64,000 nucleotides of DNA from Octopus sinensis (Eukaryota), in contig NC_043006.1 in assembly GCF_006345805.1 (NCBI RefSeq), positions 96,658,001 through 96,722,000 of the forward strand, given 5' to 3'. The notes under the pieces were generated by a model. It was not told the DNA's origin, made no database searches, and saw only the letters and a list, made by a program, of their open reading frames with translations. This document shows positions 7,600 through 63,633 of this stretch, in pieces; the first letter of the stretch is position 1, and each line of letters begins with the position of its first letter. The translations under genes and the position numbers were made by a program.

Positions 7600-8745
7600 G
7601 AATGCTTCTTGTGGAAGGGAAGCATTCCGATGGTTAGGCGATCCATTTGCTGTCAACACCCGCTAAATGGAGGGCTAGGCATGCCGTGGTTGATGATGCG
7701 CAGACATGCGCTGAGACTGCGACATCTTCGGCGCTTCATAGACGACGGTGAACAGGTGTGGTCACCGTTTGTGTAGCACGCTTTCCCGCAGTTCGTCTCC
7801 TTGGCCGAACTGCAGTCATGGATCAAACAGAGACCGAGGCTAGGCGAATGGCACCGCGAGTGTCGCGTTGCTCTCAAGCAACTCTGCCGTCCGGGACCAA
7901 ACTTGTGCGACTCAATCACAACAAAGGCATTCTATAGAGGATTAGTGGAGGGGAGGTGCGACGACGAACTCGGGCAGAGTCTGGGCGTCGACGAGGAAAA
8001 TTTGACCCGCCTGTTCAGGACAACTTTCGGGCCGGAACCTATGGACACTCACCAAAGATCCCTGGCCTGGCAGTGCTATCAAGAAGCATTACCTGTTCGG
8101 GATAAGCTCTACAGGCACTATTCGAGACACACCGGACCGACTTGCTCGAGATAAGCTCTACAGGCACTATTCGAGACACACCGGACCGACTTGCTCGAGA
8201 TGCGGTCAGAGCGACGAAACCATTCTGCACGCACTCTTGCAGTGTCCAACCAGTTAGGACCTGTGGGCTTATGCCGAACGGCTGCTGTCACGTGTGGGAC
8301 GAGTCCGCCTGTCGGCCAAGTCTGACGAGGGAATTGCTCCGCCACCTTCCCTCAACCGGGAAGGCAAGGCAATCTTCATTGTACTGGTGGCTATGGTGAA
8401 AGAATGTGTGTGGTGGACTCGAGGGAAAGGATTAGAGACAAACAATTACCTCTCTGGCCAATCGCTCATCAACTTTTTCAAGTACCACTTGAAAAGGAAT
8501 GTGAGAATGGAGAGGCAGGTTTTGTCTCGTGAAAGTTTCAAAAAAAGGTGGGTGAATGTAGCAAAGATTGTGCGTGCGAGTGACGAAACTACTTTGAGCA
8601 TGACCCTGTAAATCGAAGAGAGAGAGAGAGCACTTTGCTCTCATGTGCTTATCCCCTCCCTGCCTGAGGTTACGGTGGTCTTTTGCGTAGGCTTTTCTTT
8701 CCACGGATAAACCTAATCTTGCTTCTTACATTTTAAAAATATATA
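7600..8745 (+). mobile_element. 5'-truncated L1/Tx1-clade LINE, ORF2 C-terminal part (zf-RVT region), decayed
   Basis: Peptides FLWKGSIPMVRRSICCQHPLNGGLGMP, LAWQCYQEALPVRDKL, CSRCGQSDETILHALLQC and FFKYHLKRNVRMERQVL are typical of L1/Tx1 ORF2 ends. It has stops, frameshifts and an internal 49-bp tandem duplication at ~8101-8200. Confidence 0.85.
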
Positions 8746-8810
8746 CATATGTTCATATATGTATGTATGTAAGTATGTATGTATATATTTGTATATATAT
8801 ATACATATAT

Positions 8811-8975
8811 ACGACAGGCTTCTTTCAGTTTTTCGTCTACCAAATCCACTCACAAGGCATTGGTTGGCCCGGGGCTATAGCAGAAGACACTTGCCCAAGA
8901 TGCCACGCAGTGGGACTGAACCCGGAACCATGTGGTTGGTAAGCAAGCTACTTACCACACAGCCACTCCTGCGCC
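8811..8975 (-). mobile_element. tRNA-derived SINE family B, 5' part
   Basis: Minus strand begins ggcgcaggagtggctgtgtggtaagtagcttgc...ggttccgggttcagtccc (A/B-box-like); same as copies at 14255, 32953, 40260 and 56211. Confidence 0.85.
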
Positions 8976-9152
<177 letters not shown>

Positions 9153-9659: not shown

Positions 9660-10539
9660 TTGTTTTCTTTAAATCTCCCTGCTTGCCTTGCCTTATAACC
9701 ATTGATTAAATTAGTTTCCCCTAGAGTTTTCTCCTAACAAAACACGTTCGCAAAACACGCACACACACACACGCACGCACGCACGCACACACACAAACGC
9801 ACGCACACACACACACACACACACCACATACAAACACACACGCACACACACGTATGCACCAGAATATACACACACGCACACATACTTATACAATTCCTCA
9901 TATCCTCTGTTCGTTTGCATGTATGGCTGTGTTTTATTTTTTTTCCTCTAACGCGACAAGATTCGTTGTCATAGTAACAGCGACACGAAATGTGTTCAAG
10001 GTACTGCAATTTGTGGTGGGGGCATTTTTTTGTTTCCTTTCTTTTCATTTTTTTGTCTTTTATCTTATCTGTAACTTGACATACTGATGTTCAAATACCG
10101 GTAAAGTCGATTTTGTCTTTCATTTGATCCGGATTATAAATAATTATTTCCTCCATAGGCACAAGGTTAGCGATTTTTGTCGGTGCATGATGGGAAAAGC
10201 GGTTTGTAACCACTCTAGTACTGAGCTGATGCTATTTATCGACCGCGAAAAGGTGAAAGCAAAGTTGACTTTGGAGGGATTTGAACTCAGAATGTAAAGG
10301 TTTGGAACTACATATTGCCTATTTTGTGCAGGTACTTGATAACACCACGATGTCACCTTTTGTTCATTTTCAAAAGAAATTGACACTAGTTACTTCTGAA
10401 GTCGTCTTTGAACAGCTTGATGTCACTTTACCTGGGAAACACAACACAATTCTTCACAAAAAGATTTGAAAAACAACACAAGTTTTCATTAAAATTTTTG
10501 AAATTAATTCATGCAAGATTTCATACGTCTGGTATCACT

Positions 10540-13955: not shown

Positions 13956-14254
13956 AGTAGTAGTAGTAGTGGTGGTAGTAGTAGTAGTAGGCAGCGAACT
14001 GGCAGAATCATTAGTACTCCGAGTGAAATGCTCAGTGGTATTTTGTCTGTCGCTACGTTCTGATTTCAAATTCCACCGAGTTCGACTTTTCCTTTAATCC
14101 TTTCGGGGGTGATAAAATAAGTACCAGTTGAGCACTGAGGTCGATGTAATAGACTTACCACCTCTCCCAGAATTTCAGGTCTGTAGTAGAAAGGATTATT
14201 ACTATTAATTTCTAATGTGAGTGGCTACCTCTATGTGATTTTAATTTTTTTTTT

Positions 14255-14456
14255 CTCCTTTACTTGTTTCAGTCATTTGACTGTGGCCATGCTTGAGCAC
14301 CACCATTAATCGAGCAACTCGACCCCGGGACTTATTCTTTGTAAGCCCAGTACTTATTCTATTGGTCTCTTTTTGCCGAACCGCTAGGTGACGGGGACAT
14401 AAACACACCAGCATCGGTTGTCAAGCAATGCTAGGGGGACAAACACAGACACACAA

Positions 14457-14487
<31 letters not shown>

Positions 14488-14658
14488 CATATATCCGACA
14501 GGCTTCTTTCAGTTTCCGTCTACCAAATCCACTCATAAGGCATTAGTCGGCCCGAGGCTATAGCAGAAGACACATGCCCAAGATGCCACGCAGTGGGACT
14601 GAACCCAGAACCATGTGGTTGGTTAGCAAGCTACTTACCACACAGCCACTCCTGCGCC
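14255..14658 (-). mobile_element. SINE family B, near full length
   Basis: Head, internal (CA)/(TA) tract and tail match the other family B copies. Confidence 0.9.
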
Positions 14659-18244: not shown

Positions 18245-20179
18245 TATTATTAAAGGCGGTGAACTGGCAGAATCGTTAGGACGCCGGGTGAAAGGCTTAG
18301 CGGTATTTCTCCCGTTGCTACGTTTTAAGTTCGAATTCCGCCGAGGTCGACTTTGCCTATCATCCTTCGGGGTCGGTAAATTACGTGAATTGTTTTTGAG
18401 TATACATTGTCTGGGAGATTCTTCACCCGGCATTTGATTTAAAATATTGAAATCTTTGTGCTGATGAAGAGAATGACAGAATGGAGATGTAATTCTTGCA
18501 TCTTTATATCTATCTAACGCAGAAACGCGTCCACAAGTAATCAAATGCCGGGTGAATTTTCGTTATTTTTCCCTCTACACCAGTGTGAATTATTTTTGAG
18601 TATACATTGTTTGGGAGATTCTTCTTATAGTAGAAGAAATAGCTAAGTACTTTGGCTGCTATTTCTAAAAGTTCGGTATGTGGCAAAGCAAAATTTTGCT
18701 GAGCCCTAATTATAATCATACTCATAATTATATAAAGTATATATATGTATATATATGTGTGTATGTGTGTGTGTGTGTGTACCTATTTGTGTGTGTGTTT
18801 GACGACCATTATCAATTGACAACCAGTGTTGTTGTGTTTACTTAGCCATAACTTAGCGGTTCGGCAAAAGGGGCCGATAGAATAAGAACTAGGCTTATAC
18901 ATTAAGTCCTGGGGCCGATTTGTTCGACTGAAATCCTTCAAGGTGGTACTCTAGCATGGCCGCAGTCAACTGACTGAATCTAGTAAAAGAACAAAAGAAT
19001 ATACAGATGAGGAGCTCATATTTTTATATTTTAACCGTCAGTTGTTTCAGTCGTTAGACTGCGGCCATGCTGGGGCAACGCCTTGAAGGATTTCAGTGAA
19101 ACGAATCGACCCCAGTAATTATTTTTGTTTTGAACCTCACCCTTACTCTAGTAGTCTCTCGTGCCGAACCACTAGGTTGAGGGGACGTAAACACACCAAA
19201 ACCGGTTGTCAAACGGTGGTGGGAAACAAACACAGACACGGAGATGGACACACACGCGCGCAAGCACGCACACACACACACACACACACACAAATACACA
19301 GACAGACACACACACGCACACTATTATTCACGGACCCCTATTGCTCTTTTTTTTTATCTCATTACATCTTCATTTCTGTTTATAGAAAGAAAGTTACTCT
19401 GACTCTTAATCATTAATTACTTATCCTCTTGATGGCGCCTCGGACTTATAATTCGTTACTTTGTACTGTTAATTCAACGAATACGGCGTCTTAGAATTTG
19501 TTTTTGACATATTAGAATAAAGAAAATCTCAATTCACTTATGTGTCCCTTTTTGTTGTAAGGTTTTCTGAGGGAGAATAGATTTTTGTATACCAGAATAC
19601 GAAGAAAGCATTTAGTGATATCTGAAAGTTGCCTCAATCGACCAAAAATGGTTCATCGTAAACAAAGAATTGATATTGATATGAATATTCGGTGATTGTT
19701 GATCGTCGACAACTATAAAAGTGTATTGATATCGAATCTGATTAAGGATAACAACAGATTTGATAAAGATCTCACTTAACCACAAACTGATTATCTCCAG
19801 GTTATGCAGCGTTAAACAATTTAAAAGTGTTTTTCCTTCGTTTGAGAAATTTTAAATTTCAAGAGTGACTCACTAATGAAGTGACTCACTAATGAAGCAC
19901 TGTTCTCACAACTGTAACAGCACCGCAATCACACACTTTATCAACCGCAACAAAGAGAAAGACATCTGACTGATCGGAAAGCATTCTCTAATCAATACAC
20001 TTCAACAAGATCCCAAAGCCGTGCTGTGTCCTCGCTCTGTTTTTATACCGACACTAGAACATCTGGTTGCGTACCACTTCCACACACAACTACTGGACAT
20101 TCCCTTTTCTCCTCTCCACCTCTGTACCTACCACTGTACCTAATCTCTTCTTCCAATAGCATCAGCCCTCTGGAATTCG

Positions 20180-23272: not shown

Positions 23273-23985
23273 TTCCTTTTATCTCAGGTTTTGTTGTACC
23301 TCATAGAGTTCTGCAGCGTACGGTACCATGCAATCTGCTTTTTCAACTATCTAATAATTTCCTGATTATTCTGGCCGTGTCAAGAAGGTAAAACTTTTGT
23401 AACAGTTCTACTGGGCACTATATTCAAATTTCCTTTATATTCCCTTTCAGGCCTTCCGGTACTGTGCCCAAGGACCCAGTGATAATTGGCACTATCTTCA
23501 CCTCCTTCATTTTCCGTAGCCGGGCTCTTTCGTACTTAAAAGCATTGTATGTATCTACCTATCTTTTCGCTTCCCTTCTCGATTATTCATGGGTCAAAGG
23601 CGCATGCATCATCAACTATATAGCATCAGTGGTGCACCTTGCCCATCACCACTAGATACGGTCAGTAATGCAGTGGTACCTGATCTGTTTGGATTGGGAA
23701 ACGCCTGAGGATTTTGCTCGTCTCCGACTCCGTCACTCTCTGCGGTTTGTCCTCATATCTCTTGCCTCTCTCAAGGCTCCGCTTTTCGCACAGTTTCCAA
23801 TGTACCACTTTCACTGCTTGTTCGTGTCGCAACAATTTGTGTGGTCTTGGGCAAGACTGGGGCATTGGTTCGTGCAATGGGCAATGGTTTCATCCACTCT
23901 GTTGCAGATGCGGCACAGTGGAGACACTTGCTCATTCCTAAGGTTGACCCCACCGCTTAGTTCGTGTCCAAAGATCGGTGTAGCG
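23272..23985 (-). mobile_element. R4/Dong-clade 3' fragment flanked on both sides by (TAA)n
   Basis: Peptides VVHWKLCEKRSLERGKRYEDKP...KILRRFPIQTDQ, VKIVPIITGSLGTVP and LLDTARIIRKLL. Confidence 0.85.
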
Positions 23986-24099
23986 ATTATTATTATTATT
24001 ATTATTATTATTATTTTATTATTATTATTATATTATTATTATTATATTATTATATTATTATTATATTATTATATTATTATTATTATTATTATATTATTA

Positions 24100-25122: not shown

Positions 25123-25352
25123 GCACATACAAACATATATATGTTTGCGCACTCATATACACATATGCATTTAGGGAAAGGTCTGTGAGAGTTATTGTAT
25201 GCATGGCTGGTTGGGGCCAGGCGTTTTGCATTTTGTGTATATGTATACACATATACAAACATGTGTGCATGAAGTCCAAACATTTATTCAAATTTTATAC
25301 CACACAGAGAACGTTCACGTTCACACATGGACGGATAAATTACCCTACCTAC

Positions 25353-25423
<71 letters not shown>

Positions 25424-25428
25424 CCTAC

Positions 25429-25460
<32 letters not shown>

Positions 25461-25461
25461 A

Positions 25462-25499
<38 letters not shown>

Positions 25500-25770
25500 A
25501 ATCATACACATTATACATATGTGTGTATATTTGTGTCTGCATGTATGCATGCTTGTACGTAAGTATGCGTGTATACATGCATATTTGTATTTATATACAG
25601 GAATATATATCTTTTGCGTGAGAGTTTTTTTTCTTGCGGTATGCGTGTACTGTGTATGCAAATGCACATTTGATCATGTGCGCCTGTATACATATATGCA
25701 TAAAGTCATATATACACATGTATATGTGTGTGTATGTGTGTATAAGCATATACATATATATGTATGTGTA

Positions 25771-25815
<45 letters not shown>

Positions 25816-25824
25816 TATATATAG

Positions 25825-25856
<32 letters not shown>

Positions 25857-25918
25857 TGAAACAAACAGACAGACAGACAGAGGCAGACAGATAGACAGAT
25901 AGATAGACAGACAGACAG

Positions 25919-26027
<109 letters not shown>

Positions 26028-27891
26028 AAAGTGTACGAGCACCAATATAACTCAAATCATACACTGAACGCAGATGTCATTATGGGTCACCGTTTATAAA
26101 TGATATATTCTTAATGGTGTTCCAATACATATGTATTAGTTTATATGTTGTCGTGTGCTGAGGCCCTTAAATAGCTATTGTGTATATCTAAAGATCGCAG
26201 AGGCGTAAAACATGAATCGCGAAATGATCATTCGGTTTACATGTATATATTTACAGATACACACACGCGCACGTGCACACACTCACACTCACACGCACAC
26301 TCTCACAAACACATACATGCATCTATATACACACACAGACACATGTACATACTCACACATATAAACATATACACACTTACACACGCACACACACATATGT
26401 ATGTATACGCAAACAAACAGATACATATATTATAGGATTTCCTTGCATTGAGGTACAGGAAATTTCCATTGCGGATGACCGTCTAATGATGCAAGAAGGG
26501 GTTAATTCTGCGATAGGGTTTCTATAATACAGAAAACTCAATAGAAGTCTGCAGCATATTTGTAGAAATATTGAAGTACGGATAAATCTAAACAAAGCAA
26601 CGACACATTTCATCAATAGGCTGGTAGAAAGTTAGGAAGTATTTCTTAGATTACTCACCTATGTTGGTAGAATCTCCATCAGCTTTGGATTAAAAGCCAC
26701 TTCAGAAAACTTTAAAGTTATAACAAATATCCACAGCACCATTTCTACAGACATCTCTTTACGAGTACAGAAATTAAATGTTGATGCACAGTGATATCGA
26801 ACTCGGAATCTACGAGACAGAAGAACCAACTACCTTAAAACACATCTTTGATATTGTTTAAAGAATGACGAATCTTGGTATAAGTGTTTTGTACGCATGG
26901 TTTCCAGTATTTCTTTCCGACTATTCTTTCTTTTGGATGTAACATCTTCCTTCTCGTTGTCATCATCAAAACCAACACAAATAACATCTTTATCTATACC
27001 TCTGCTGCCATCGCCATCATTGTTCCTCTTCCACTATCTAATCTGCTTTCTCTCCTTTGTCCTCGCCGCCTCCTCGCTGTCATCACCACCTGTCATCGTT
27101 GACCTCATTTTCTTGGCCATTTCTCTATTATATTCATTTTGTAAATACTATGTTTTCTTATCAAATCGTTATTGCCTAACAAAATGTGATTTTATTTTTC
27201 ATTGCTTACACATTTAAATAAAGTTATAACCGTGGCTATGTCCTTAAGACGTTCGCATCGAATCCACGCGGTCACAGGTTCTGTCACATTTCATGGATTA
27301 TTCCTGAAAATGTCTTCTAGTATAACTTGAGGCCAATCTACACCTTGTGAGCGAAGTCGGTAGACAAAGATTCTGCAGAATACCATCGCATGTTCACGTG
27401 TTTGAATAGCCTCACAATCGGTGTTACTTTGTGTAATTCCCTAAAAGGTAGCGGTTCGGTATAAATGAGACCGATAAAAATAAAGAATAAAACATTAAAA
27501 CTGAGAACTGATGTCGATTTGTAACTTCAGAAAGCTGTAGCACTACAGAACCGCAGACTAATGCTTCAAACCAGTTAAGTAAAATTATAGACAATTCTAT
27601 TAGGAATTCCTTTCTGAAAAGTATTAGTAATTTAAGTAGCAAGTTTGTGTCTAAGTTACTTAATAAACCCCAAAACTAAAAACAAAGCGCAGAAGTTTCT
27701 GTAACTAAAGGTGAGAACCGCTCAACTAGTTTCCCCTCTATTAGTGACACGTTATCTAGACGTTATCTCACTTTATATATTGCAGTGAAACTAAATATAT
27801 ATTTATTAAGTATATTCTCTACAATTTTGTAGACATACTCGCGTGTGTGTTTGCACCTCTTTGTGGAGAACAAAACGGAATGTGAGTTCTA

Positions 27892-28127: not shown

Positions 28128-28438
28128 ATGTGAGTTCTACGAGCAAGAATATAAGGGTGTAGAGCAGAGATGTGATAGATAGATATATAAGAATAACATT
28201 TATAGTAGATTTAGTAAGTAAACATTCGTTTTCACCTGACAAGCAAAACTTGAAGACTCAGTCGAAACGGATGTAACAATAAATTTGATTCGGCTTTCAC
28301 TATTGAGTCTCCTCATAAGTAAATGCTCTATTGATATTCTTAAACTTACTTGAAAATGATTATCTTAAAGTTAACATTACTGAGCCTATATAAAGAGATA
28401 TAGGCTCAGTAATGTTAACTTTAAGATAAAAGAGATAT

Positions 28439-28745: not shown

Positions 28746-29062
28746 GATAAAGAGATATAGAAAGAATTATATGGAAATAGTCATCCGGTGTAGAAGAGGT
28801 AAGGAACAGATGAAGAGGAAGAACGAAAATAAATAAAGAATAAACAAAAAACTTGGAAAAAAGGAAGAAAGGGTAAGAGAAAGACAAAGGCGAAGAATCA
28901 AGAATGAGGGGAAAAACAAAAGAATAGTCCATGAAAACGGAGTGACACAAAGGGAGAGAAAATGAAAGAGGTGTGAATTAAGGGACAGGGAGTGAAAGAT
29001 AAATATAAGGGAGAGTATGGCGAAAGGAGAGATAGAGCAGAGGAGAACGACAGAGGATGAGT

Positions 29063-29098
<36 letters not shown>

Positions 29099-29636
29099 GT
29101 GTGAGAGAGAGGGCAGGTTGACAGACAGTCAAACTGAAAGACAGTAGATAGAAGTAAGAGAAAAGAAGAACGTGGGCGAGAGAGAGAGAGAGGAAAGATA
29201 TTAGGAAGACAGAAAGAGTGAGGTACAAATATACACTGAACAAAGATTGGTACAAAGATAGCAAACATAACAACACACGCGCGCGCACACACACAAACGC
29301 ACACACATGTGTAGATGCAAGCTGTGTGAGAAGACGGAAGAGGAGAAGAATTATGCAAATAAAAAAATGAAGAAAATGAGGATGAAGAGTCACTCAAAGG
29401 GACAAATACAACAAGGCATACAGACAGACATAGGGACAGATGTGTATATATATATATATATATATATCTATATATATATATATATTATATATATATATAT
29501 ATGTATATGTATATGTAGTATAAAGGGAGAGAGAGAAAGAGAGAGAAGCAGACAGAGACAGAGATAGATATTAGATTGATGGATAGATTGATAGACTACG
29601 AATATATGTATGTGTGTGTGTAAGGAAAAGGGACGG

Positions 29637-29676
<40 letters not shown>

Positions 29677-29691
29677 GTAGATGGTGCAGAG

Positions 29692-29729
<38 letters not shown>

Positions 29730-30274
29730 GTGTGAGAGAGAGGGCAGGTTGACAGACAGTCAAACTGAAAGACAGTAGATAGAAGTAAGAGAAAAGAAGA
29801 ACGTGGGCGAGAGAGAGAGAGAGGAAAGATATTAGGAAGACAGAAAGAGTGAGGTACAAATATACACTGAACAAAGATTGGTACAAAGATAGCAAACATA
29901 ACAACACACGCGCGCGCACACACACAAACGCACACACATGTGTAGATGCAAGCTGTGTGAGAAGACGGAAGAGGAGAAGAATTATGCAAATAAAAAAATG
30001 AAGAAAATGAGGATGAAGAGTCACTCAAAGGGACAAATACAACAAGGCATACAGACAGACATAGGGACAGATGTGTATATATATATATATATTATATTAT
30101 ATATATATATATATAATATTATATATATATATATATATATGTATATGTATATGTAGTATAAAGGGAGAGAGAGAAAGAGAGAGAAGCAGACAGAGACAGA
30201 GATAGATATTAGATTGATGGATAGATTGATAGACTACGAATATATGTATGTGTGTGTGTAAGGAAAAGGGACGG

Positions 30275-30314
<40 letters not shown>

Positions 30315-30720
30315 GTAGATGGTGCAGAGAAAGAGAGAGAGAGAGAGAGAGAGAGTTTGTGTGTGAGAGAGAGGGCAGGTTGACAGACAGTCAAACTGAA
30401 AGACAGTAGATAGAAGTAAGAGAAAAGAAGAACGTGGGCGAGAGAGAGAGAGAGGAAAGATATTAGGAAGACAGAAAGAGTGAGGTACAAATATACACTG
30501 AACAAAGATTGGTACAAAGATAGCAAACATAACACACACGCGCGCGCACACACACGCGCACACACACACAAACGCACACACATGTGTAGATGCAAGCTGT
30601 GTGAGAAGACGGAAGAGGAGAAGAATTATGCAAATAAAAAAATGAAGAAAATGAGGATGAAGAGTCACTCAAAGGGACAAATACAACAAGGCATACAGAC
30701 AGACATAGGACAGATGTGTA

Positions 30721-30793
<73 letters not shown>

Positions 30794-30925
30794 GTATATA
30801 TGTATGTATAAAGGGAGAGAGAGAAAGAGAGAGAAGCAGACAGAGACAGAGATAGATATTAGATTGATGGATAGATTGATAGACTACGAATATATGTATG
30901 TGTGTGTGTAAGGAAAAAGGGACGG

Positions 30926-30967
<42 letters not shown>

Positions 30968-30994
30968 GTAGATGGTGCAGAGAAAGAGAGAGAG
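29063..30994. repeat. Tandem triplication of a ~630-650-bp microsatellite-rich unit
   Basis: Units start at ~29063, ~29691 and ~30329; the same ORF translations recur three times in the track. Confidence 0.95.
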
Positions 30995-31440
30995 AACGGG
31001 AAAGAGGAAATGGTAGGCGGAACAAAGAGTCCGAGATTGGAGGAAGTTATAGCAATTTTGTGATGTGTGTATGTGTGTGTGAACATTTGTGGTGGCAATG
31101 TGATACCTTCTGAGTATGTATATGTGTGTGTGTGTGTGTGCATGTGTGTGTGTGTTTCTGTAAGGAATGTAAATAGTCTTAAGATAGGAAATTATGCAGA
31201 CATAAGCCCCATCTATGCCACCACATCACACAGCTCTAAATTAACTTCTCTAAAAGATGTTGTTTCTGTTTAAACATAGAGGCAACTTACTCTGACCAAA
31301 GCACCTTTCATCTGGCACACAAGAATCACCTCGCACATCTACACACACACACACACACTCACGCTCACACTTACACATACACACACATACACACACTCAC
31401 ACAAACACTCGCAAGCACACACATATGCATACAAACATTG

Positions 31441-32952: not shown

Positions 32953-33311
32953 TACTCTTACTCTTTTACTCTTTTACTTGTTTCAGTCATTTGACTGCGG
33001 CCATGTTGGAGCACCGCCTTTAATCGAGCAAATCGACCCCAGGACTTATTCTTTGTAAGCCTAGTACTTATTCTATCGGTCTTATTCTAGCAATGCTAGG
33101 GGGACAAACAGACACACAAACACACACACATACATATATATATACATACATACATCCGACGGGCTTCTTTCAGTTTCCGTCTACCAAATCCACTCACAAG
33201 GCATTGGTCGGCCCGGGACTATAGTTGAAGACACTTGCCCAAGATGCCACGAAGTGGGACTGAACCCGGAACCATGTGGTTGGTTAGCAAGCTACTTACC
33301 ACTCCTGCGCC
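32953..33311 (-). mobile_element. SINE family B with internal deletion
   Basis: Head at 33311 and (GAGTAAAA)n-type tail at 32953. Confidence 0.85.
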
Positions 33312-34803: not shown

Positions 34804-35587
34804 GAGAAGAAATGCATTGATCAATAAAGAAAAGAAATCCCGGGCTGGTTGACAAAAGGACGAACGGAGTTGTGCCTGAAGGATGTATCAAAGGGAAATG
34901 CTGCTGTAATTACAGACGAATTTCCTTCTTCCATTAATGTGCAAGTTACTGTCAGGAGGAATTGCAGAACTGTATAGATTTCTTGATGAGAACGATATAT
35001 TACCGATGGAACAAAAAGGCTGTAGAAGGATATGCAGATGTCCCAAATATCAACTCTGATAGACAAAATGGTAATGCAAGATTGTAAACAAAGGAGAACA
35101 AATCTGGGAATGGCCTGGATTGACTGTCGCGAAGTTTATGATATAATGCCACATTCGTGGATCATCCAGTGCTTAGATCTGTTTGGAATTGCGAGGAATG
35201 CATTGTGTTTCCTGAAAAGAAGTGTGGTGGGATGGAAAACTATATTAGTACCGATATTAGAAAGGAACTTGGACTCACGAAGTGCGGTATAATCTACCTA
35301 AAAAGAGGTAAAGTACAGACCCAGGCTTGGATAGAATTACCGAATAGACACTTGATTAAACAAATTGAAACGGAAGGATATAAATATCTTGGTGTACTGG
35401 AGCTCAACGAGATAACGGAAAAGGAAATGAAAGAGCAACTGAGGATGGAGTATTGACTGGATGGAATAAAATAGCTAATACGTGGGCGATAGCATTACTT
35501 CGGTACGGAGCGGGAATTATAAAATGGCAAAAGGAAAGAAGTTGGATATCAAGACCAGAAAAATATTGACAGTACACGGAGCCTTGG
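34803..35587 (+). mobile_element. R4/Dong-clade reverse-transcriptase fragment, decayed with internal deletions
   Basis: IPGWLTKGRTELCLKDVSKGN...ILPMEQKGCRR...LIDKMVMQDCKQRRTNLGMAWIDCREVYDIMPHSWII...GYKYLGVLE is characteristic of R4/Dong RT. Confidence 0.9.
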
Positions 35588-35840
35588 ATTTTATTCCCTC
35601 CAGTCAATACTCCATCCTCAGTTGCTCTTTCATTTCCTTTTCTGTTATCTCGTTGAGCTCCAATACACCAAGATATTTATATCCTTCCGTTTCAATTTGT
35701 TTAATCAAGTCTCTATTCGGTAATTCTATCCAAGCCTGGGTCTGTACTTTACCTCTTTTTAGGTAGTACTGTTACTTCTCTACACAATCGTTAAACAGAC
35801 ATGAACAGACATGATATTTTTCTACCATGCATAATTGAAG

Positions 35841-38167: not shown

Positions 38168-39927
38168 ATTTTGCAATGTTGAAGTGTGTTAAACATTAAA
38201 AAAATTGTGTAATGCACATAAAGTTCAATTAACACTTTCATACCTTCGTAGTAATCATCAGATTTCAAAATGTATTTAACTGACAGCTGAGTTCTTGATA
38301 AATGGAGTAAAATGACTGATTTCCTTTTTATACCTTCTAGAAGCTGAATTTTTGGAATACGGTTTTGACCAATCAGCATGCAGCTTAAACGTCACGGTTT
38401 GCCGAGCACATCGATATTACTGACGTAGATGCCGCCTTTATTTTAACCAATTAGCTTGCAGTTTACATCTAATGGTTTTATGAGTGAGCAAACTTAATTG
38501 ATTTCGATCGCTCTTATTTCAATCGGTGGGAGTCTTCTGTAATTTGTTTATATTCATATGTTAAAGATATTTTTAGATCCACATCATTCACTGGTTGTTA
38601 TACTATTGTTGTTATTTCCGTTCAGAACAGGTTTGAACATTTTCATAAACCCTTTTTTCTTTTATATTTCTTCCAACCTGACTTGTGTCATGCAGTTTGT
38701 GGAAAGGAAAAATTATAAGAATTTACTGACTACACTCAATGGAATTTGGCGAACATTAGTGTTCCGGATTTGTTGTCTGTAGACTCGTGAGCATTCCGAT
38801 AATGCATTCTCTGTCTCACCAATATATAGTTCCTCGCAATTAGGACATTTAATGCAGTAGATCAAATTTCGGCTTTTGCAGTTCATATCTGCATTTGTGA
38901 AAATCTGTCCAATTTTTGTTCTAATGGATCTACCAATGTGCATGTGTTGACACGTTCCGCATCTGTTATCATTACACTTGGATACTGTGAATGTCTTATC
39001 CTCTTTGTTCAAGTTGAATTTTGCCTTGGTTAATAGTTTCTTCAAGTTATTGCTTAAGATGCGTTCGATTATCTATTATGTTTTTTAATTTTTCACTTTG
39101 TTTCATGATTGATAAATTTGTTTTGATGATGTTAACAATGTTTTGGTGATGCGGATTGTGTTACCAGAAATGATATTGTGTTCTGTTGCTGAGTTCGTCT
39201 CTCTCGTGATGCCCTAAGTTGTAATATAGGCGTCTCTTTTGATCGTTGTAAGTTATTTTCTATGAGTAGGAGAAGGTATTTTTGCTTGAGCAGAAATCCT
39301 TCGAGTTCTATAAGTCGTATGTTCCTGGTAATTGGAACATCTACTATACTACTAATTTTCCTGGCAAGAGAGTACGGGATGTCGCATTTTGTATGTCTTG
39401 GGTGGCATGATTTGAAATTTAGGAACTGGTGTGTATCTGTGCTTTTGTAATAAGTATCAGTTGTGATTGTGGTGTTGGTTTTGATAACCATTATATTAAG
39501 AAATGGTAATTGTGTGCTACTCAATTCTCTTGTGAACTTGAAGTGTAAATTGTTGAAGAGAGTGGGGAATTCTTTCAGATTTTCTAGGGATTTGATCCAA
39601 ATTAGGAAGCAGTCATAGAGGCATCTTTTCCATGTGTCTTCTATATGCCTTCTAAAGGTCATGCCGTAGTTCTCTTCAACTTTTGATATAGATTTTGTTC
39701 CAAATATCCCAGTACTGAGTTCGCGAGAGCTGGAGCAAATCGCGTCCTCATAACTGTGCCTCGAATTTGGAGGAAGTTTTTTTTCAGTTGAAAAGGAATG
39801 CATTGTTTTCGAGGCTGAGACTAGTATGAAGGTCAAAGTAAATCTACGGGGGATCGGTTCTTTGTTTCTCGACCCAACATTACAAAATATCTTTTTTATT
39901 GCTTAACGCACTTCAACGTTGTGAAAT
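38168..39927 (-). mobile_element. Penelope-like element, 5'-truncated: RT C-terminal part, GIY-YIG endonuclease and pseudo-LTR
   Basis: ORF 39132-39836: LPFLNIMVIK...TYYKSTDTHQFLNFKSCHPRHTK..IPYSLA. ORF 38713-39045: KCNDNRCGTCQH...NCKSRNLIYCIKCPNCEELYIGET. Frameshifted. Confidence 0.92.
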
Positions 39928-40259: not shown

Positions 40260-40667
40260 CTTTTACTCTTTTACTCTTTTACTTGTTTCAGTCATTTGAC
40301 TGTGGCCATGCTGGAGCACCGCCTTTAATCGAGCAACTCGACCCCGGGACTTATTCTTTGTAAGCCCAGTACTTATTCTATCAGTCTCTTTTGCCGAAGC
40401 GCTAAGTGACGGGGACATAAACACACCAGCATCGGTTGTCAAGCAATGCTAGAGGGACACACACAGACACACAAACATACACGCACACATATATATATAC
40501 ATATATACGACGAGCTTCTTTCAGTTTCCGTCTGCCAAATCCATTCACAAGGCTTTGGTCGGCCCGAGGCTATAGTAGAAGACACTTGGCCAAGGTGCCA
40601 CGCAATGGGACTGAACCCGGAACCATGTGGTTGGTAAGCAAGCTACTTACCACACAGCCACTCCTGC
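40260..40667 (-). mobile_element. SINE family B, full length
   Basis: Complete head-to-tail match with the other copies. Confidence 0.9.
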
Positions 40668-43560
40668 ATACACATATATACATACATATATATTCTTGTT
40701 GCTGCTGCCGCTGAGAGCAGGTTAGAGAAATGCTGCCGTGTCTTCCTATCATTCTTTGTATAGCTTTATCAAATGTTTGCTTGTTTAATGTATTTCATCA
40801 CAACACACACCAAGCAGCAGAGACGATTGTGTGCATTCCTGGATAAAGTAAATTATTGGCTAACTCAATATCTACAAAGGAACCCCAACTCGATCGCACT
40901 TCCCCTCCCCTCCCCTCTCTCTCTATCGATGTCTTCTTCTTTAATATCATCCTTCTATTTTCTTAATAAATTGTCTTCTCTGCTATGTTTTATGCATCTA
41001 TTTATTTATTGATAGTAGAGCTTCAATAACTGTACGTGTTTGTTTGTGTATGTAGGTGTGTGTGACTGTGTGCGTTTGTGTTTGTGTGTTTGTGTGTACC
41101 TTGATATAGAGAAAAAGAAAGGGTAAATACGAACAAAGAGGGTTTACAGAATAAGAAGGAAGAGTAAGAGAATTTAGAGAATACAAAGTGCTAGAGGACA
41201 AAGGGGAGGGGCTTTTTCATCTACGGTGATATATTAAGGGTTCATGAAACACTTTTGCTTCATATGTATCTATTACAAGAAGCAGCTAGATTTCTTCCTC
41301 TTACGTTTTTCACAAATTAATGCTTGAAAAACAAAATAGGTATTTTGAAAGAAGTATCTATAAATCTAGTTTTTAAGCATCGTATGGCTATGGAATCGAA
41401 TGGAATTGTAAGCAAAGGGTCCATAGATAAAGAATGGTTGTGAACCACCTGCCTGTACGTTCAAATTCTACAGAGGTCAACTTTGCCTTTCATTCTTTCG
41501 GGATCAGTGAAATAAGTACCAGTGGACTGCTGGGGTCGATGCAATCGACGAGCCCGCTCTCCTAAAACTGTCAGGCTTTGTGCCAATAGTTGAAGGAACT
41601 ACTAGTCGAGAAAGAAAAGCGACGAGCTGGCAGAATCGTTGGCGCGGCGGACAAAATGCTTAGCGGTATTTCGCCCGTCTTTATGTCCGTAATTCAAATT
41701 ATTTCTGAGTCAAGGAAATAAGTACCAGCGAAGTACTACAGTCAATGTACCTCTGCCCTAAAAGACATTGTATGTATGTATGTATGTATGTGTGTGTGAT
41801 TATTCAGTTTTATTTCAAGATTTCTAGCCTAGATCCAAGACTCCTTCGTTCTCTCTCGTTCTGTTGATTATTTTCAACTATCATCATCATCAGTACCACC
41901 GCCATCGCCACTACAACTGAAATACACACACCATTCAGACTTCTCATGACACCACCATTGATACCTTTGACTTCGCCGCCTTCCCCTCCACCATCATCAC
42001 CACTGCCTTTCACACTCCTAACTATCACCGTTGTCCCTGACTGCTTCAGCAACCACCACCACCGTCATCACCGCCTCTATCACAACTACAGCTCATACTA
42101 TTACTATCACCTGATTACCATCGCAATCGTGAATCTGCTACCGTCTCTATTCTTACCCCAACATGAGCCATAGGAGGAGTGTCAATGAATAGTTAGATAG
42201 GGAGTTGAAATGTGACACACTGACACACGGAAATTAGTTTTCGCATTGATTATATCAGATTATAAACTTCTGAAACGTTTTACAGATTTTTACAGTACCA
42301 GTGATGGACTGGATCTGTAGTCTTCGAATTAGCTTTCTCCTTTCTGGTTTTGAGAAGGTTAATTTCTCAAGATTGGTATTTAAGCAGTGCGTTACATATC
42401 CCAGTGCACCTGAATTATGTATGCATCTATGTATGTATGTGTGTATGTATGCATGTATGTATGTATGTATGTATGTATGTATGTATGTATGTATGTATGT
42501 ATATATGCATGTGTGTATGTATTTATGTTTGTATGAATGTATGTATGTTTATATGTATGTTTGTATGTATGTTTGTATGTATGTATGTATGTATGCATGT
42601 TTGTATGCATGTATGTATGTATGTTTGTATGTATGTATATTGTATCTGCTGTTAGGAATTAGGTAGTATCAATCAATAATAAGTTAATCAATACATATTG
42701 GTGTTTGTGTTAATGTTGGGGTCAGTGGTGGTGGAGAGGATTGTTGTTGTTATTGGTCGTATGGTCGCGGTAGAGAAGGTGGTGATGAAGTGGAGGATTT
42801 TAGTTTTGGTGATGGTATCGTTGGTGGTATTAGTGCTTCCGTAGGTGATTTAGTTGTAATGTTGTTGGTCGTGTTGGTGTGTTACTGACGATTTGTTGAT
42901 GTAGGAGGTGGTTGTCGTGATAGCGGTGATCATTGTTTTATGTCGTGCTCTTAATGATGTTCCAAGAAGAAATGTTAGTAACGATGAAAAATGATGCTGC
43001 TGCGGTTGTACTTCTTGTTGTTGTATTGGCCCAGGACATCCCCGATTTAACAGAGATATGATCCGAGACATTCCGACCATGACTATCCCGACTGTTTAAT
43101 TTAAATCTACAACTATTTTACAAAATATAAACTAACGTGCCCTTTCGATACGAAATACGTTGGTGTGTGATTTAAGGAAGAATTAGTCGCAGTTATATGT
43201 AGCAAATCGATTAGACTTGTGACTGAAGACGCTCCAGCTATGACCAATACGCCTTCTTTTAAAAACGTTTTACCTCATTTGTTTTTTATTTACAACAGGA
43301 GAGGGGAAGAAGATTTGGCTCCGGTTTCCATTAAGCCCAACAACTTTAGAGATGTTCACTTTTGTCTAATCGTAGTGAACATGGTGGTCAAACAGAAGAC
43401 AAAAAACTCAGTGTGAAGGAAAATTCAGCAACAACAATAACAGCAATTACATTACTTATGGTTTCTCTCACCCTGTCAAGTAAAAAAGTAACTGAAAACA
43501 TACGCATACATAGATACTCATATATATACATACATACATACATACATATATATATATATA

Positions 43561-45587: not shown

Positions 45588-46325
45588 GTATATAAAGGTT
45601 ATTTGAGTTAGACGTTAAAATAACCGCCTAAGGGATAGAAGTATTCAATATAAACTGGTATATTACTAATATTTAACCTTGGGCATACATATGCAAGCAT
45701 ATTATGTTCATAAGTTATAGGTAAAATAAGGATAAACATGGTTTTATCAAGAATCAAAATTGAAAGAAAACTGAAAATGCAGAAGTACCGATTAACAACA
45801 AATTACTTACATCAATTATTATTTATTAACACAATGCAAATAAACTGCATACCATCTAACAGCTGTTTCTGCTTCCAATGTTGTATGATATTATCATTGA
45901 TATTCAAAAATATGTAGAAGTATTAATCATATTTGCTAATAAAACCGATCTGAAACAAGGAGCTTCATGAGAGTGAAGAATAAAGGACAAGAGTATAGAG
46001 AAGAAGAAGGGTAAAGTTGAATATGGTTGTAATCATACGATTTTGCTTGTGGATCTCTTTAGGCCGCTAAGTAAAAACTATAACCAAAATAGCGATTAGT
46101 GGATTAATCCTCTGAACAGGGGCGGAGAGGGATAAGATGGATAAATAACATATAATAAAAAAACAAATAAGAGTTGGATACGCCAATAGGTTTTAGTCAG
46201 AGAAATGGTGTAGATACAGTGAGGTTTTATATTAATCGTAATAATTCATAATACTTGTGTTTGCAGTACTTATTAATAACATTAATCACAATAAACTGCT
46301 AATGAGTTAATATAATATATTTATT

Positions 46326-46351
<26 letters not shown>

Positions 46352-46356
<5 letters not shown>

Positions 46357-46430
46357 ATATTAAATTAGAGATAAAACCACTATTAGGCAAATTGCCTAAT
46401 AGTGGTTTTATCTCTAATTTAATATAATAT
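46352..46430. repeat. Perfect 39-bp-arm hairpin with 1-nt spacer
   Basis: atattatattaaattagagataaaaccactattaggcaa-a-ttgcctaatagtggttttatctctaatttaatataatat. Confidence 0.95.
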
Positions 46431-46527
46431 ATATTTATACTATAATATATATTTATACTAAAAAATTGGATTTAATCCTAAATCTAATCTTTCCCTGTAA
46501 GTTTGGATTTACTCCCTAATATTATTA

Positions 46528-56210: not shown

Positions 56211-56674
56211 TATTCTTTTATTCTTTTATTCTTTTATTCTTTTACTTGCTTCAGTCATTTGACTGCGGCCATGCTGGAGCACCGCGTTTAGTCGAAGAAA
56301 TCTACCCAAGGACTATGTAAAGCATAGTACTTATCCTATCGGCCTCTTTTGCCGAACTGGGGGACATTAACGCACCAGCATATGATGTCAAGCGATGGCG
56401 AAGGGAAAAAACATAGACATAGAAACAGACAGGCAGGCACACACACATACACACACACACACACACACACGCACACAAACACACACACTCATACACACAG
56501 AAACATACAAACAGGCTGGCACACACACAAACACACACTCACACACACTCACACAAATATTGGTCGGCCCTTGGCTATAGTAGAAGATACTTGCCCAAGG
56601 TGCTACGCAGTGGGACTGAACCCAGAGCCATGTGGTTGGAAAGCAAGCTTCTTACCACATTGTCACACCTGCGC
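56211..56674 (-). mobile_element. SINE family B, full length, diverged
   Basis: Matches the other family B copies. Confidence 0.85.
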
Positions 56675-62123: not shown

Positions 62124-62643
62124 TAATACATACATACATATATACATATATACATACATACATACATACATACATACATACAAGCAAAAATATTTAGAGA
62201 GGGAGAGATAGAGAGACGGACAGGCAGAGAGACAGGCAGAGAAAGAGAGATGCGTATGTGTGTGTTATTTGACGAATGTGCGTGTAATATTTTTTCTCCT
62301 CCTGTCTTCAATTCTGACGATGTAACTGATTGTTTTATGTGCTAGATTTACACGGATGGCGATTTCTCGACAGACTAAACAGATTAAGGATATTCTTAAC
62401 AAACAGAAGATTAATTTTTATATTCGCCTGTATAAACTAAAACTGTTCTACTCGTATCCTAGCCAGCTTAGCCTTCTTTGAATCCGCCTTTTATTTGATT
62501 ATACGTGTACGTACACGCATCACATACGCACACGCGCACTCACGCACACACACGGTCACACACACGCGCGCGCGATGCTCTATTTGGGGCTTTAAACTCA
62601 CTAGTAGCAGGTAGTCGTACAATATATATATATAAATATATAT

Positions 62644-63181
62644 ATCAACAATCAAGGAACGGCCATAATAGGCCATTCACCCACTAGAAATAACAGCCAA
62701 AGCTTCAACCGCAAATAAAAATTAATTCCGTAAACCAGGAGAAAATTTAAAAAACATTTACCCTGTAATTTCTTATACGATGCACCGTTTCATCTGCTGT
62801 TTAATGGTAAACTAACCTGATTAAATTAAATCAAGCCAATCTTCCTCCATAGGCCTCAGATTCTTCGTAAGAAATAGCCCAAGTCGGACAGATATTTTCA
62901 CGAGGCATTTCGGAAATGCCTCGTGAAAATATCTGTTCCGACTTGGGCTATTTCTTACTGAAGAATCTGAGGGCCTATGGAAGATTGGCTTGATTTAATT
63001 TAATCAGGTTAGTTTACCATTAAACAGCAGATAAACGGTGCATCGTATAAGAAATTACAGGGTAAATGTTTTTTTAAATTTTTCTCCTGGTTTACGGAAT
63101 TAATTTTTATTTGCGGTTGAAGCTTTGGCTGTTACTTCTAGTGGGTGAATGGCCTATTATGGCCGTTCCTTCATTGTTGAT
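62644..63181. repeat. 538-bp near-perfect palindrome centred at 62912
   Basis: Centre ...cacgaggcatttc-g-gaaatgcctcgtg...; the arms align over ~268 bp. Confidence 0.97.
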
Positions 63182-63315
63182 GTTGAACTTAAAAATGTCT
63201 ATGACTATTTAATTTTTTCCCCACTAGGCCGCTGGTGGCAAAAAAATTCTACAAAATTTTTTTGCCACCCTATATTGATTATTATAAATATATATATTAT
63301 ATATATATATATAAT

Positions 63316-63359
<44 letters not shown>

Positions 63360-63633
63360 TATATAGATTGGTAGATAGATATAGATATATACATACTCAC
63401 ACACACAAACACACACATATATACATATATATATATATATTTTATATATATACATATATACATATATGTACACGCATATATATGTGTGTATGGGTGTAAG
63501 TATGTATATATGTATGTAAATCTATCTATATTTCTATCTACCCGCTCCCTTTCTGTATATATATATATATATATGTATACATACATAGTAGCAAAGAAAC
63601 TTTATTAAAAGTCTTGGAATAATAATGATGATG

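What the first reader, a model, noticed from the sequence alone, without database searches (positions are those of the whole stretch)
62644..63181. 538-bp near-perfect palindrome with a 1-nt spacer
The ~268-bp arms differ by about 2 substitutions and 7 small indels, several in homopolymers. That pattern resembles unpolished long-read error, so the true arms may be almost identical. Spacer-less palindromes this long are normally unstable. Both flanks return to unrelated sequence, which argues against a simple fold-back chimeric read. I see no clear TSD, and the arms contain scraps resembling other local repeats (ctagaaataacagccaaa; cttcctccatagg), suggesting fold-back duplication of ordinary DNA rather than a classic MITE. 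If transcribed it would give a long hairpin RNA (siRNA or editing substrate).
Basis: partly seen in the sequence, partly recalled or inferred. Interest (0 to 1): 0.7.

Follow-up and report, generated by a model that had tools for sequence, protein, structure and literature searches.

The report
Young 538-bp single-locus DNA palindrome
A nearly perfect 538-base DNA palindrome next to a TA microsatellite, in what looks like an octopus genome, is most likely a recent inverted duplication made by a replication template switch, not a mobile element or a sequencing artefact; this is a known, fragile, fairly ordinary kind of feature.

Summary
Positions 62644-62911 and 62913-63181 are reverse complements around a single G at 62912. 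The arms differ by 2 substitutions and 7 small indels. The DNA hairpin folds at -299 kcal/mol (z = -52).

The arm is unique in the 64-kb window. It has no target-site duplication, no internal sub-repeats, no Rfam match and no coding capacity. The "scraps" shared with other local repeats are at chance level.

The indel-heavy difference pattern is significantly unlike older repeat pairs in the window (2:7 against 162:21, p = 2e-5). This fits residual long-read error in arms that short reads cannot map uniquely, so the true arms are probably almost identical.

The window holds three more unrelated perfect hairpins with short spacers, with arms of 39, 32 and 15 nt. One of them shows a 10-nt re-copied loop, the signature of a snap-back template switch. 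The left arm abuts a (TA)n tract.

Best reading (about 0.45): a recent single-locus inverted duplication by replication template switching at the (TA)n tract. Rivals are a palindromic MITE (about 0.28; genome-wide copy number could not be tested) and an assembly artefact (about 0.12). Any role as an RNA hairpin is untested.

Interest is modest.

The parts
62644..62911 (.). Left arm of the palindrome (268 nt, 37% GC, non-coding, no internal repeats)
   Evidence: alignment; no internal direct repeats; no open frame longer than 57 aa; GC content
62912..62912 (.). One-base centre (G) between ...GGCATTTC and GAAATGCC...
62913..63181 (.). Right arm (269 nt), the reverse complement of the left arm apart from 2 substitutions and 7 indel events
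62622..62645 (.). (AT)6.5-A-(AT)5 microsatellite directly abutting, and overlapping by AT, the outer end of the left arm. Proposed fork-stalling site and AT-microhomology return point; alternatively a TA-rich transposon target.
   Evidence: The chance that either boundary lies within 2 nt of the end of a (TA)>=5 tract is about 2.7%, a post hoc figure.
63175..63186 (+). Isolated tandem hexamer TGTTGA|TGTTGA straddling the outer boundary of the right arm. Its meaning is unexplained.
   Evidence: There are 36 such isolated non-SSR 6+6 tandems in 64 kb, giving about 0.6% for coincidence with a boundary (post hoc).

Best explanation
This is a real, evolutionarily very young, single-locus inverted duplication of ordinary non-coding DNA.

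Proposed mechanism (inferred, not shown):
1. A replication fork moving leftwards copied the sequence that is now the right arm.
2. The fork stalled at the hairpin-prone (TA)n tract that then lay directly next to it.
3. The nascent 3' end (...GGCATTTC) switched to the complementary strand, either sister or nascent, and copied back about 268 nt. This made the left arm.
4. It then returned to the original template on AT microhomology in the (TA)n tract.

Most of the 9 differences between the arms are probably uncorrected long-read indel errors, because reads from one arm map equally well to the other. The true arms are then nearly identical.

The structure has no demonstrated function. It should be cruciform- or hairpin-prone and unstable. 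If transcribed, it would give a dsRNA stem of about 268 bp.

Shown: the structure, its uniqueness in the window, the lack of TE hallmarks, the error-like difference spectrum, and independent template-switch hairpins nearby.

Inferred: the direction of the event, the role of the (TA)n tract, and the young age.
For: 1. Palindromic symmetry runs to a 1-nt centre, the arm is unique in the window, and both flanks are unique.

2. No TSD was found at any of 28 x 28 boundary offsets. Only a self-complementary AT is present, or TA on the left against TG on the right. There are no internal direct repeats and no sub-repeats.

3. The window contains three further perfect short-spacer hairpins with unrelated sequences:
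- 46352-46430, 39-nt arms, 1-nt centre.
- 28360-28429, 32-nt arms, 6-nt loop.
- 63234-63269, 15-nt arms.
A mirror-repeat control gives only one hit, of 11 nt, and there are no hairpins with arms of 10-14 nt.
Several unrelated sequences, each folded back on itself, point to a mutational process rather than one TE family.

4. The 28360-28429 hairpin has the 10-mer AAAGAGATAT at its centre (28392-28401) and again directly after its right arm (28429-38). This is the X-L-rcX-L-D arrangement expected from snap-back priming on the self-complementary ATAT followed by return to the template. Chance is about 5e-5.

5. The (TA)n tract lies exactly at the outer end of the left arm.

6. The arm difference spectrum of 2 substitutions to 7 indels compares with 162:21 in older repeat pairs (p = 2e-5). 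The short hairpins and the 179-nt LINE inverted repeat with a 115-nt spacer have 0 indels. Nanopore base calling is known to degrade at inverted duplications (PMC7229812).

7. Template switching is an established source of perfect reverse-complement repeats (PMC5453318 and PMC8794818).
Against: - No ancestral or empty allele, and no reads, could be examined. The event itself and its polarity are therefore inferred.
- The 268-nt copied fragment is far longer than the template-switch events catalogued in primates. I recall those as typically tens of bp, but the passages read give only the filters (14 bp minimum, 10 bp for high confidence), not a length distribution.
- The junctions show only trivial microhomology (AT, or a re-copied G). 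The TGTTGA|TGTTGA tandem at the right boundary is not explained by the model.
- Adjacency to (TA)n is equally expected for a transposon that targets TA.
- Genome-wide copy number is unknown.
- No decayed, older hairpins were seen in the window. This needs either rapid loss of palindromes or an assembly-related origin.
Confidence: 0.45

Rival explanations
1. It is a recently inserted copy of a palindromic non-autonomous DNA transposon: a whole-length-TIR MITE or foldback-like element, for example one mobilised by Tc1/mariner and inserted at a TA in the (TA)n tract.
For: - The whole element is an inverted repeat of MITE size.
- If the element is taken as 62645-63180, the left flank is TA and the right flank is TG. 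One lost base would restore a TA/TA duplication, and the region is indel-rich.
- A (TA)n tract is a natural target for a TA-specific element.
- Octopus genomes are reported to hold many recently active Tc1-Mariner and other TIR families (PMC13282606). Applying this to the window rests on my memory-based identification of its SINE as octopus.
- Absence of a second copy in 64 kb is uninformative for families below about 40,000 copies in a multi-gigabase genome.
Against: - There is no intact TSD.
- The termini (TCAACAATCAAGG...) do not resemble the usual Tc1/mariner, hAT, piggyBac or PIF ends. This point is from memory.
- There are no paired internal binding-site repeats of the IR/DR type and no FB-type sub-repeats.
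- No related sequence was found in the window, in viral or metagenome contigs, or in prokaryote genomes. These collections are poor in eukaryotic DNA.
- The other hairpins in the window are unrelated in sequence, and one carries a template-switch signature rather than a TSD.
- In the O. vulgaris annotation, the 65 recently active 'MITE' families contribute exactly 65 insertions. Structure-based MITE calls in octopus are therefore often single-locus hairpins.
Confidence: 0.28
2. It is an assembly or library artefact. The genome has only one arm, and the inverted copy was introduced by chimeric fold-back molecules, amplification chimeras or mis-consensus.
For: - Indel-rich arms show that this stretch was not well polished.
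- All four hairpins in the window are perfect or near-perfect, with no decayed examples. That pattern is what a technical process would give.
- Fold-back reads exist in ONT genomic DNA at about 0.6% (PMC12870357).
Against: - A fold-back read continues back into the reverse complement of its own upstream flank and is symmetric about its midpoint. Here the right arm is followed by at least 800 nt of unrelated unique sequence. Two precise switches would be needed in the reads that dominate the consensus.
- A rate of 0.6% of reads cannot win a consensus.
- The two arms carry different errors, as expected if both were sequenced independently many times.
- The small hairpins are perfect and short enough to be checked by single short reads during polishing.
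Confidence: 0.12
3. Whatever its origin, it is a functional hairpin-RNA locus: an endo-siRNA or hpRNA precursor, a young miRNA-like gene, or an ADAR editing substrate.
For: - A perfect stem of about 268 bp would be an excellent Dicer or ADAR substrate.
- Sub-threshold Rfam hits to miRNA precursor models at the centre show only that it is a good hairpin. The best is 54 bits against a gathering score of 83.
- Template switching has been proposed as a source of new miRNA hairpins (PMC10710096, listed).
Against: - Nothing reaches an Rfam gathering threshold.
- There is no evidence of transcription, of conservation or of a target gene.
- The arm matches nothing else in the window.
- The stem is far longer than a miRNA precursor.
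- Its youth and likely instability argue for a neutral, transient structure.
Confidence: 0.05
4. It is two independent head-to-head insertions of the same repeat.
For: None beyond the inverted arrangement.
Against: - Both copies would have to be truncated at exactly the same base and abut with 1 nt between them.
- No other copy of the repeat exists in a window full of SINE and LINE copies.
Confidence: 0.02

Closest known systems
Template-switch mutations creating perfect inverted repeats (four-point model, event type 3-2-1-4 / 1-4-3-2; Loytynoja & Goldman 2017, PMC5453318; Monttinen & Loytynoja 2022, PMC8794818)
   Same: A reverse-complement copy of immediately adjacent sequence is inserted in place, giving a perfect hairpin in one step. 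There is no TSD and it occurs at a single locus. A clear small example lies in the same window at 28360-28438.
   Different: The copied fragment is about 268 nt, not tens of nt. No ancestral sequence is available to define the four switch points.
Human palindromic AT-rich repeats (PATRR11 about 450 bp, PATRR22 about 600 bp, PATRR17 about 190 bp; PMC1851657, PMC4940405)
   Same: These are several hundred bp long, nearly perfect palindromes without a spacer. They are locus-specific sequences with no homology to each other, hard to sequence, and expected to extrude cruciforms and be unstable or polymorphic.
   Different: PATRRs are more than 90% AT, whereas this palindrome is 63% AT. PATRRs are defined by translocation breakpoints, which cannot be assessed here.
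Whole-length palindromic MITEs and foldback transposons (for example the C. elegans PAL-type elements and Drosophila FB; from memory)
   Same: Size, and an inverted repeat occupying the whole element.
   Different: No TSD, no sub-repeats and no second copy found. Family membership is untested at genome scale.
Replication-fork leading/lagging template switching that produces inverted amplifications (ODIRA; PMC4689423, PMC10766183)
   Same: Switching between strands at a fork, at or near short inverted or self-complementary sequence, creates an inverted junction with almost no spacer.
   Different: ODIRA yields kilobase-scale or larger inverted triplications via hairpin-capped intermediates. Here there is a 268-bp duplication with an immediate return to the template.
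Drosophila hpRNA (endo-siRNA hairpin) loci (from memory)
   Same: A long inverted repeat with a short loop that would give a long dsRNA.
   Different: hpRNA arms derive from, and target, protein-coding genes and are transcribed. Here there is no target and no expression evidence.

Membership tests
MITE / foldback DNA transposon | Terminal inverted repeats | tested here: met
   The whole 538 bp is an inverted repeat. This is trivially met and not discriminating.
MITE / foldback DNA transposon | Target-site duplication flanking the element | tested here: not met
   All boundary offsets from -12 to +15 and lengths of 2-11 nt were searched. No direct repeat lies at the ends. Only a self-complementary AT was found, or TA on the left against TG on the right.
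MITE / foldback DNA transposon | Multiple dispersed copies with different flanks | tested here: inconclusive
   There is no second copy in the 64-kb window, in IMG/VR, in JGI metagenomes or in GTDB genomes. The host genome itself was not searchable, and the window is too small to detect a low- or medium-copy family.
MITE / foldback DNA transposon | Sub-terminal repeated binding sites (IR/DR type) or tandem sub-repeats in the arms (FB type) | tested here: not met
   There are no direct repeats of 9 nt or more and no 14-mers with 2 or fewer mismatches within the arm.
Template-switch mutation (four-point model) | The inserted segment is the reverse complement of nearby sequence on the same molecule | tested here: met
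   The arms are adjacent reverse complements with 262 of 268 columns identical.
Template-switch mutation (four-point model) | An ancestral or sister sequence lacking the copy, from which the four switch points can be placed | not testable with these tools
   No orthologous or allelic sequence is accessible. Six exact-protein look-ups of ORFs from the window, five of them at or beside the palindrome, found nothing.
Template-switch mutation (four-point model) | Short range and short copied fragment (tens of bp in my recollection; the passages read give only the filters, a 14-bp minimum and 10 bp for high confidence) | tested here: not met
   The fragment is about 268 nt. The paper's filters and examples are tens of bp. 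The two smaller hairpins in the window (32 and 39 nt) do fit.
PATRR-type genomic palindrome | Several hundred bp, nearly perfect, no spacer | tested here: met
   538 bp with a 1-nt centre. Criteria are from PMC4940405.
PATRR-type genomic palindrome | More than 90% AT | tested here: not met
   63% AT. Quarter-arm GC is 24-45%.
PATRR-type genomic palindrome | Mediates recurrent translocations; size-polymorphic by central deletions | not testable with these tools
   This needs population or sperm data.
Long-read fold-back chimera artefact | The second half of the molecule retraces the first, flanks included | tested here: not met
   Symmetry ends at 62643/63182. The right flank is unrelated to the reverse complement of the left flank, and both are unique. 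The definition is from PMC12870357.
miRNA / hpRNA gene | Match to a curated RNA family or evidence of processing | tested here: not met
   There are no Rfam hits at gathering threshold. Only generic sub-threshold hairpin matches were found. Expression is not testable.

The most novel reading that the evidence does not exclude
The palindrome may be the largest member of an unusually active class of template-switch hairpin births in this (apparently octopus) genome. There are four perfect short-spacer hairpins in 64 kb and none decayed. If that density holds genome-wide, replication template switching at (TA)n-rich DNA would be a continuous source of new dsRNA-forming loci. Those loci could be raw material for the lineage's expanded miRNA repertoire and for ADAR editing substrates. 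This locus would then be a transcribed, young hairpin-RNA gene.
Probability: 0.07. Interest if true: 0.6.

Novelty: new member of a known kind. Interest (0 to 1): 0.3.

Why it matters
The locus is mainly a quality and variation flag. It is a spacer-less palindrome of this length that is probably mis-polished, and it is likely to be polymorphic and fragile. It will also confuse read mapping, variant calling and MITE finders.

Two points give it some wider value. First, with the three small perfect hairpins in the same window, one carrying a textbook snap-back signature, it suggests that template switching is a visible mutational process in this SSR-rich genome. Second, it gives a concrete, testable prediction of the empty allele. 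A genome-wide count of such hairpins would be cheap and could link replication errors at microsatellites to the birth of dsRNA-forming loci.

Tried and rejected
- **Rfam.** Nothing reached gathering thresholds over the whole window. A permissive scan of 62300-63500 gave only generic miRNA-precursor hits below threshold, on both strands. These reflect hairpin shape, not family membership.
- **tRNA scan.** None found.
- **Other copies.**
  - BLASTN (word size 7) and nhmmer of the arm against the window found nothing beyond the two arms.
  - IMG/VR gave 0 hits.
  - JGI metagenomes gave 3 hits that are only 19-33-nt chance matches.
  - GTDB genomes gave 0 hits.
They exist (16/18 at 18651-18668; 12/13 at 10147-10159) but do not extend, and they score within the null distribution. 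Rejected as evidence.
- **Independent assemblies.** Six exact-protein look-ups of ORFs from the window, five at or beside the junctions and one in the Penelope-like fragment 23 kb away, returned nothing on record.
- **Organism identification by protein homology.**
  - A Penelope-like ORF gave one unnamed 51%-identical ENA metagenome protein.
  - A LINE C-terminal fragment gave nothing. The protein collection evidently lacks this eukaryote.
  - A text search for a SINE 20-mer in the literature found nothing.
  - The octopus assignment therefore rests on my memory of the abundant octopus SINE and is unverified.
- **TSD search over all offsets.** Negative.
- **IR/DR or FB sub-repeats.** Negative.
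- **Junction microhomology.** Only AT or G was found. The TGTTGA tandem is noted but unexplained.
- **Endogenous parvovirus- or densovirus-type terminal hairpin.** Considered and dropped. There are no viral genes nearby, no viral-contig match, and the shape is wrong.
- **Literature.** A search for cephalopod foldback elements found no papers, and an octopus MITE search returned three papers that I did not open.

Full report
**Observation**

The palindrome is real in the sequence and sits at exactly the stated coordinates. The left arm is 62644-62911 and the right arm is 62913-63181, and they are reverse complements around a single G at 62912.

A global alignment gives 262 identical columns and two substitutions, at 62653 (C against G) and 62690 (A against G). 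There are seven indel events totalling nine bases. Four are in homopolymer runs, one is in a TCC.TCC repeat and two are isolated.

Symmetry stops abruptly at 62643/63182. As single-stranded DNA the region folds into one hairpin of -299 kcal/mol. Shuffles give -51 +/- 5, so z = -52.

**Context**

The window is eukaryotic. It is 35% GC and about 14% perfect microsatellite, and it is full of SINE, LINE and Penelope-like fragments. It has no tRNA or Rfam genes.

The abundant SINE (for example 8780-8990) matches my memory of the common octopus SINE. This is a lead only. Attempts to confirm the organism through protein homology or literature text search failed.

The palindrome lies in a unique island of about 1 kb between microsatellite arrays. 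Both flanks are unique in the window.

**What it is not**

- Nothing in Rfam reaches threshold. The sub-threshold miRNA-model hits at the centre, on both strands, only say 'good hairpin'.
- The arm has no open frame of note.
- It has no internal direct repeats or sub-repeats.
- It has no second copy in the window by BLASTN or nhmmer.
- No target-site duplication exists at any plausible boundary. The only candidates are the self-complementary AT at both ends, or TA on the left against TG on the right.
- Searches of viral contigs, metagenome contigs and prokaryote genomes found nothing related.
- Six exact-sequence look-ups of ORFs from the window, five at or beside the junctions, found no independent assembly of the locus.
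- The host genome itself could not be searched, so copy number remains the main open point.

**Are the arm differences real?**

Older repeat pairs in this window differ mainly by substitutions: 162 mismatches to 21 gap openings. The palindrome arms show 2 to 7, and Fisher's exact test gives p = 2e-5.

Other inverted structures carry no indels at all. These are a LINE-derived inverted repeat with 179-nt arms and a 115-nt spacer, and two perfect hairpins with 39-nt and 32-nt arms. Those structures can be spanned or uniquely placed by short reads. Reads from inside a 268-nt spacer-less arm map equally well to both arms and are normally ignored by polishers.

Nanopore base calling is also known to fail specifically at inverted duplications (PMC7229812).

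The most economical reading is that most of the nine differences are uncorrected long-read errors and the true arms are nearly identical. If the two substitutions were real, the octopus neutral calibration quoted in PMC13282606 (JC 0.09 for about 25 My) would put the event at roughly 1 My, with wide error.

**Artefact?**

A fold-back chimeric read retraces its own flank and is symmetric about its midpoint. Such reads make up about 0.6% of ONT genomic reads and are virtually absent from HiFi data (PMC12870357).

Here the right arm is followed by unrelated unique sequence. An artefact would therefore need two precise switches in the reads that dominate the consensus. I give this about 0.12. The remaining worry is that every hairpin in the window is perfect or near-perfect and none is decayed.

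**Other hairpins in the window**

I scanned for perfect inverted repeats with spacers of 8 nt or less in non-simple sequence. Besides the target, the scan found:

- 46352-46430: 39-nt arms with a 1-nt centre, GGCAA-A-TTGCC.
- 28360-28429: 32-nt arms with the loop AAAGAG.
- 63234-63269: 15-nt arms, lying 53 bp to the right of the palindrome.

Nothing was found with arms of 10-14 nt. A mirror-repeat control found a single 11-nt case. The four arm sequences are unrelated, so they are not one TE family.

The 28360 hairpin is informative. The 10-mer AAAGAGATAT occurs at the centre (loop plus the first four bases of the right arm) and again immediately after the right arm. This is the X-L-rcX-L-D arrangement expected in three steps:

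1. A nascent 3' end ...ATAT snaps back onto the self-complementary ATAT at the end of X.
2. It copies X.
3. It returns to the original template slightly upstream.

A hairpin-generating template-switch process is therefore visibly at work in this DNA. The process itself is well described (PMC5453318 and PMC8794818).

**Proposed mechanism for the 538-bp palindrome**

The outer end of the left arm abuts, and overlaps by AT, a (AT)6.5-A-(AT)5 tract at 62622-62645. The chance that either boundary touches such a tract end is about 2.7% (post hoc).

I propose that the right arm plus the right flank is the ancestral sequence, with the (TA)n tract originally adjoining what is now the centre. The steps would be:

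1. A leftward fork stalled at the (TA)n tract.
2. The nascent end ...GGCATTTC switched to the complementary strand and copied back about 268 nt.
3. It re-annealed on AT in the (TA)n tract.

With a 1-nt centre, an intra-strand snap-back is sterically unlikely. An inter-strand (leading/lagging) switch, as in ODIRA-type models, is more plausible (PMC10766183 and PMC4689423, listed).

The mirror polarity, with the left arm ancestral, cannot be excluded. The isolated tandem hexamer TGTTGA|TGTTGA sits exactly at the right boundary. There are 36 such tandems per 64 kb, giving about 0.6% for coincidence with a boundary (post hoc). The model does not explain it.

**Main rival: a palindromic MITE**

- A TA-targeting palindromic MITE would also explain the (TA)n adjacency.
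- Recently active Tc1-Mariner and other TIR families are reported in Octopus vulgaris.
- A 64-kb window cannot exclude a family of a few thousand copies.

Against it:

- There is no intact TSD.
- There are no binding-site repeats.
- The termini are atypical.
- The neighbouring hairpins carry a non-TE signature.
- In the O. vulgaris table of recently active insertions, 65 'MITE' families contribute exactly 65 insertions. Structure-based MITE calls there are therefore often single-locus hairpins of this sort.

I give the MITE reading about 0.28.

**Comparison with known things**

- In mechanism it resembles template-switch mutations of the inverted-repeat-creating type, but it is roughly ten times longer than the events I recall from primate genomes.
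- In architecture it resembles human PATRRs, which are several hundred bp, nearly perfect and spacer-less (PMC4940405 and PMC1851657). It is only 63% AT, against more than 90% for PATRRs.
- It fails the tested defining features of MITE and foldback elements other than being an inverted repeat.
- It is not a member of any Rfam family.

**Verdict**

The feature is most likely a young, single-locus, non-mobile inverted duplication whose arms are under-polished. That makes it a new example of a known kind of feature, of modest interest.

The dsRNA, siRNA and editing ideas remain untested speculation. One BLAST of the arm against the full genome and one look at spanning reads would settle the three-way choice between duplication, MITE and artefact.

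Noticed in passing
window 28360-28438: A perfect 32-nt-arm hairpin with the 6-nt loop AAAGAG. The 10-mer AAAGAGATAT at the centre (28392-28401) recurs directly after the right arm (28429-28438). This is a textbook snap-back template-switch insertion of about 37 nt, just upstream of a SINE head.
   Followed up: yes
window 46352-46430 (gapped extension 46319-46466): A perfect 39-nt-arm palindrome with a 1-nt centre (GGCAA-A-TTGCC). Its outer arms run into (TA)n-rich sequence. It is unrelated in sequence to the 538-bp palindrome.
   Followed up: partly
window 63234-63269: A small perfect hairpin (15-nt stem GGTGGCAAAAAAATT, 6-nt loop; DNA fold z = -5.1) lying 53 bp to the right of the big palindrome.
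   Followed up: partly
window 35294-35472 and 35588-35766: An inverted repeat with 179-nt arms (4 substitutions, 0 indels) and a 115-nt spacer, inside a LINE reverse-transcriptase fragment. It looks like an inverted partial duplication of a retroelement, of the twin-priming kind.
   Followed up: partly
window 29027-30995: Three tandem copies of a unit of about 630 bp. The best pair has 2 mismatches and about 17 indels over 1.3 kb, and nearly all the indels are inside embedded microsatellites.
   Followed up: partly
window 63175-63186: An isolated tandem hexamer TGTTGA|TGTTGA exactly at the right boundary of the palindrome. It is unexplained by any model considered.
   Followed up: partly
window 38713-39902 (- strand): A degenerate Penelope-like retroelement fragment: an RT C-terminal part followed by a GIY-YIG-like motif (CPNCEELYIGET). 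The only database relative is a 51%-identical unnamed metagenome protein.
   Followed up: partly
window 8780-8990, 14250-14655, 33086-33302, 40269-40693, 56420-56500 and others: Many 88-92%-identical copies of a tRNA-like SINE with microsatellite tails. From memory this matches the abundant octopus SINE, which suggests the window is from an octopod cephalopod. This is unverified.
   Followed up: partly
window 25345-26032: Two oppositely oriented arrays of a TATC/GATA-type tetranucleotide satellite form a long imperfect inverted repeat. This is a microsatellite effect, not a unique-sequence palindrome.
   Followed up: no
window 7777-8608 and 23814-24032: GC-richer fragments encoding the C-terminal zinc-knuckle-like end of non-LTR retrotransposon ORF2 (C..CG..ET..H.L..CP motif). 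There were no database hits.
   Followed up: partly
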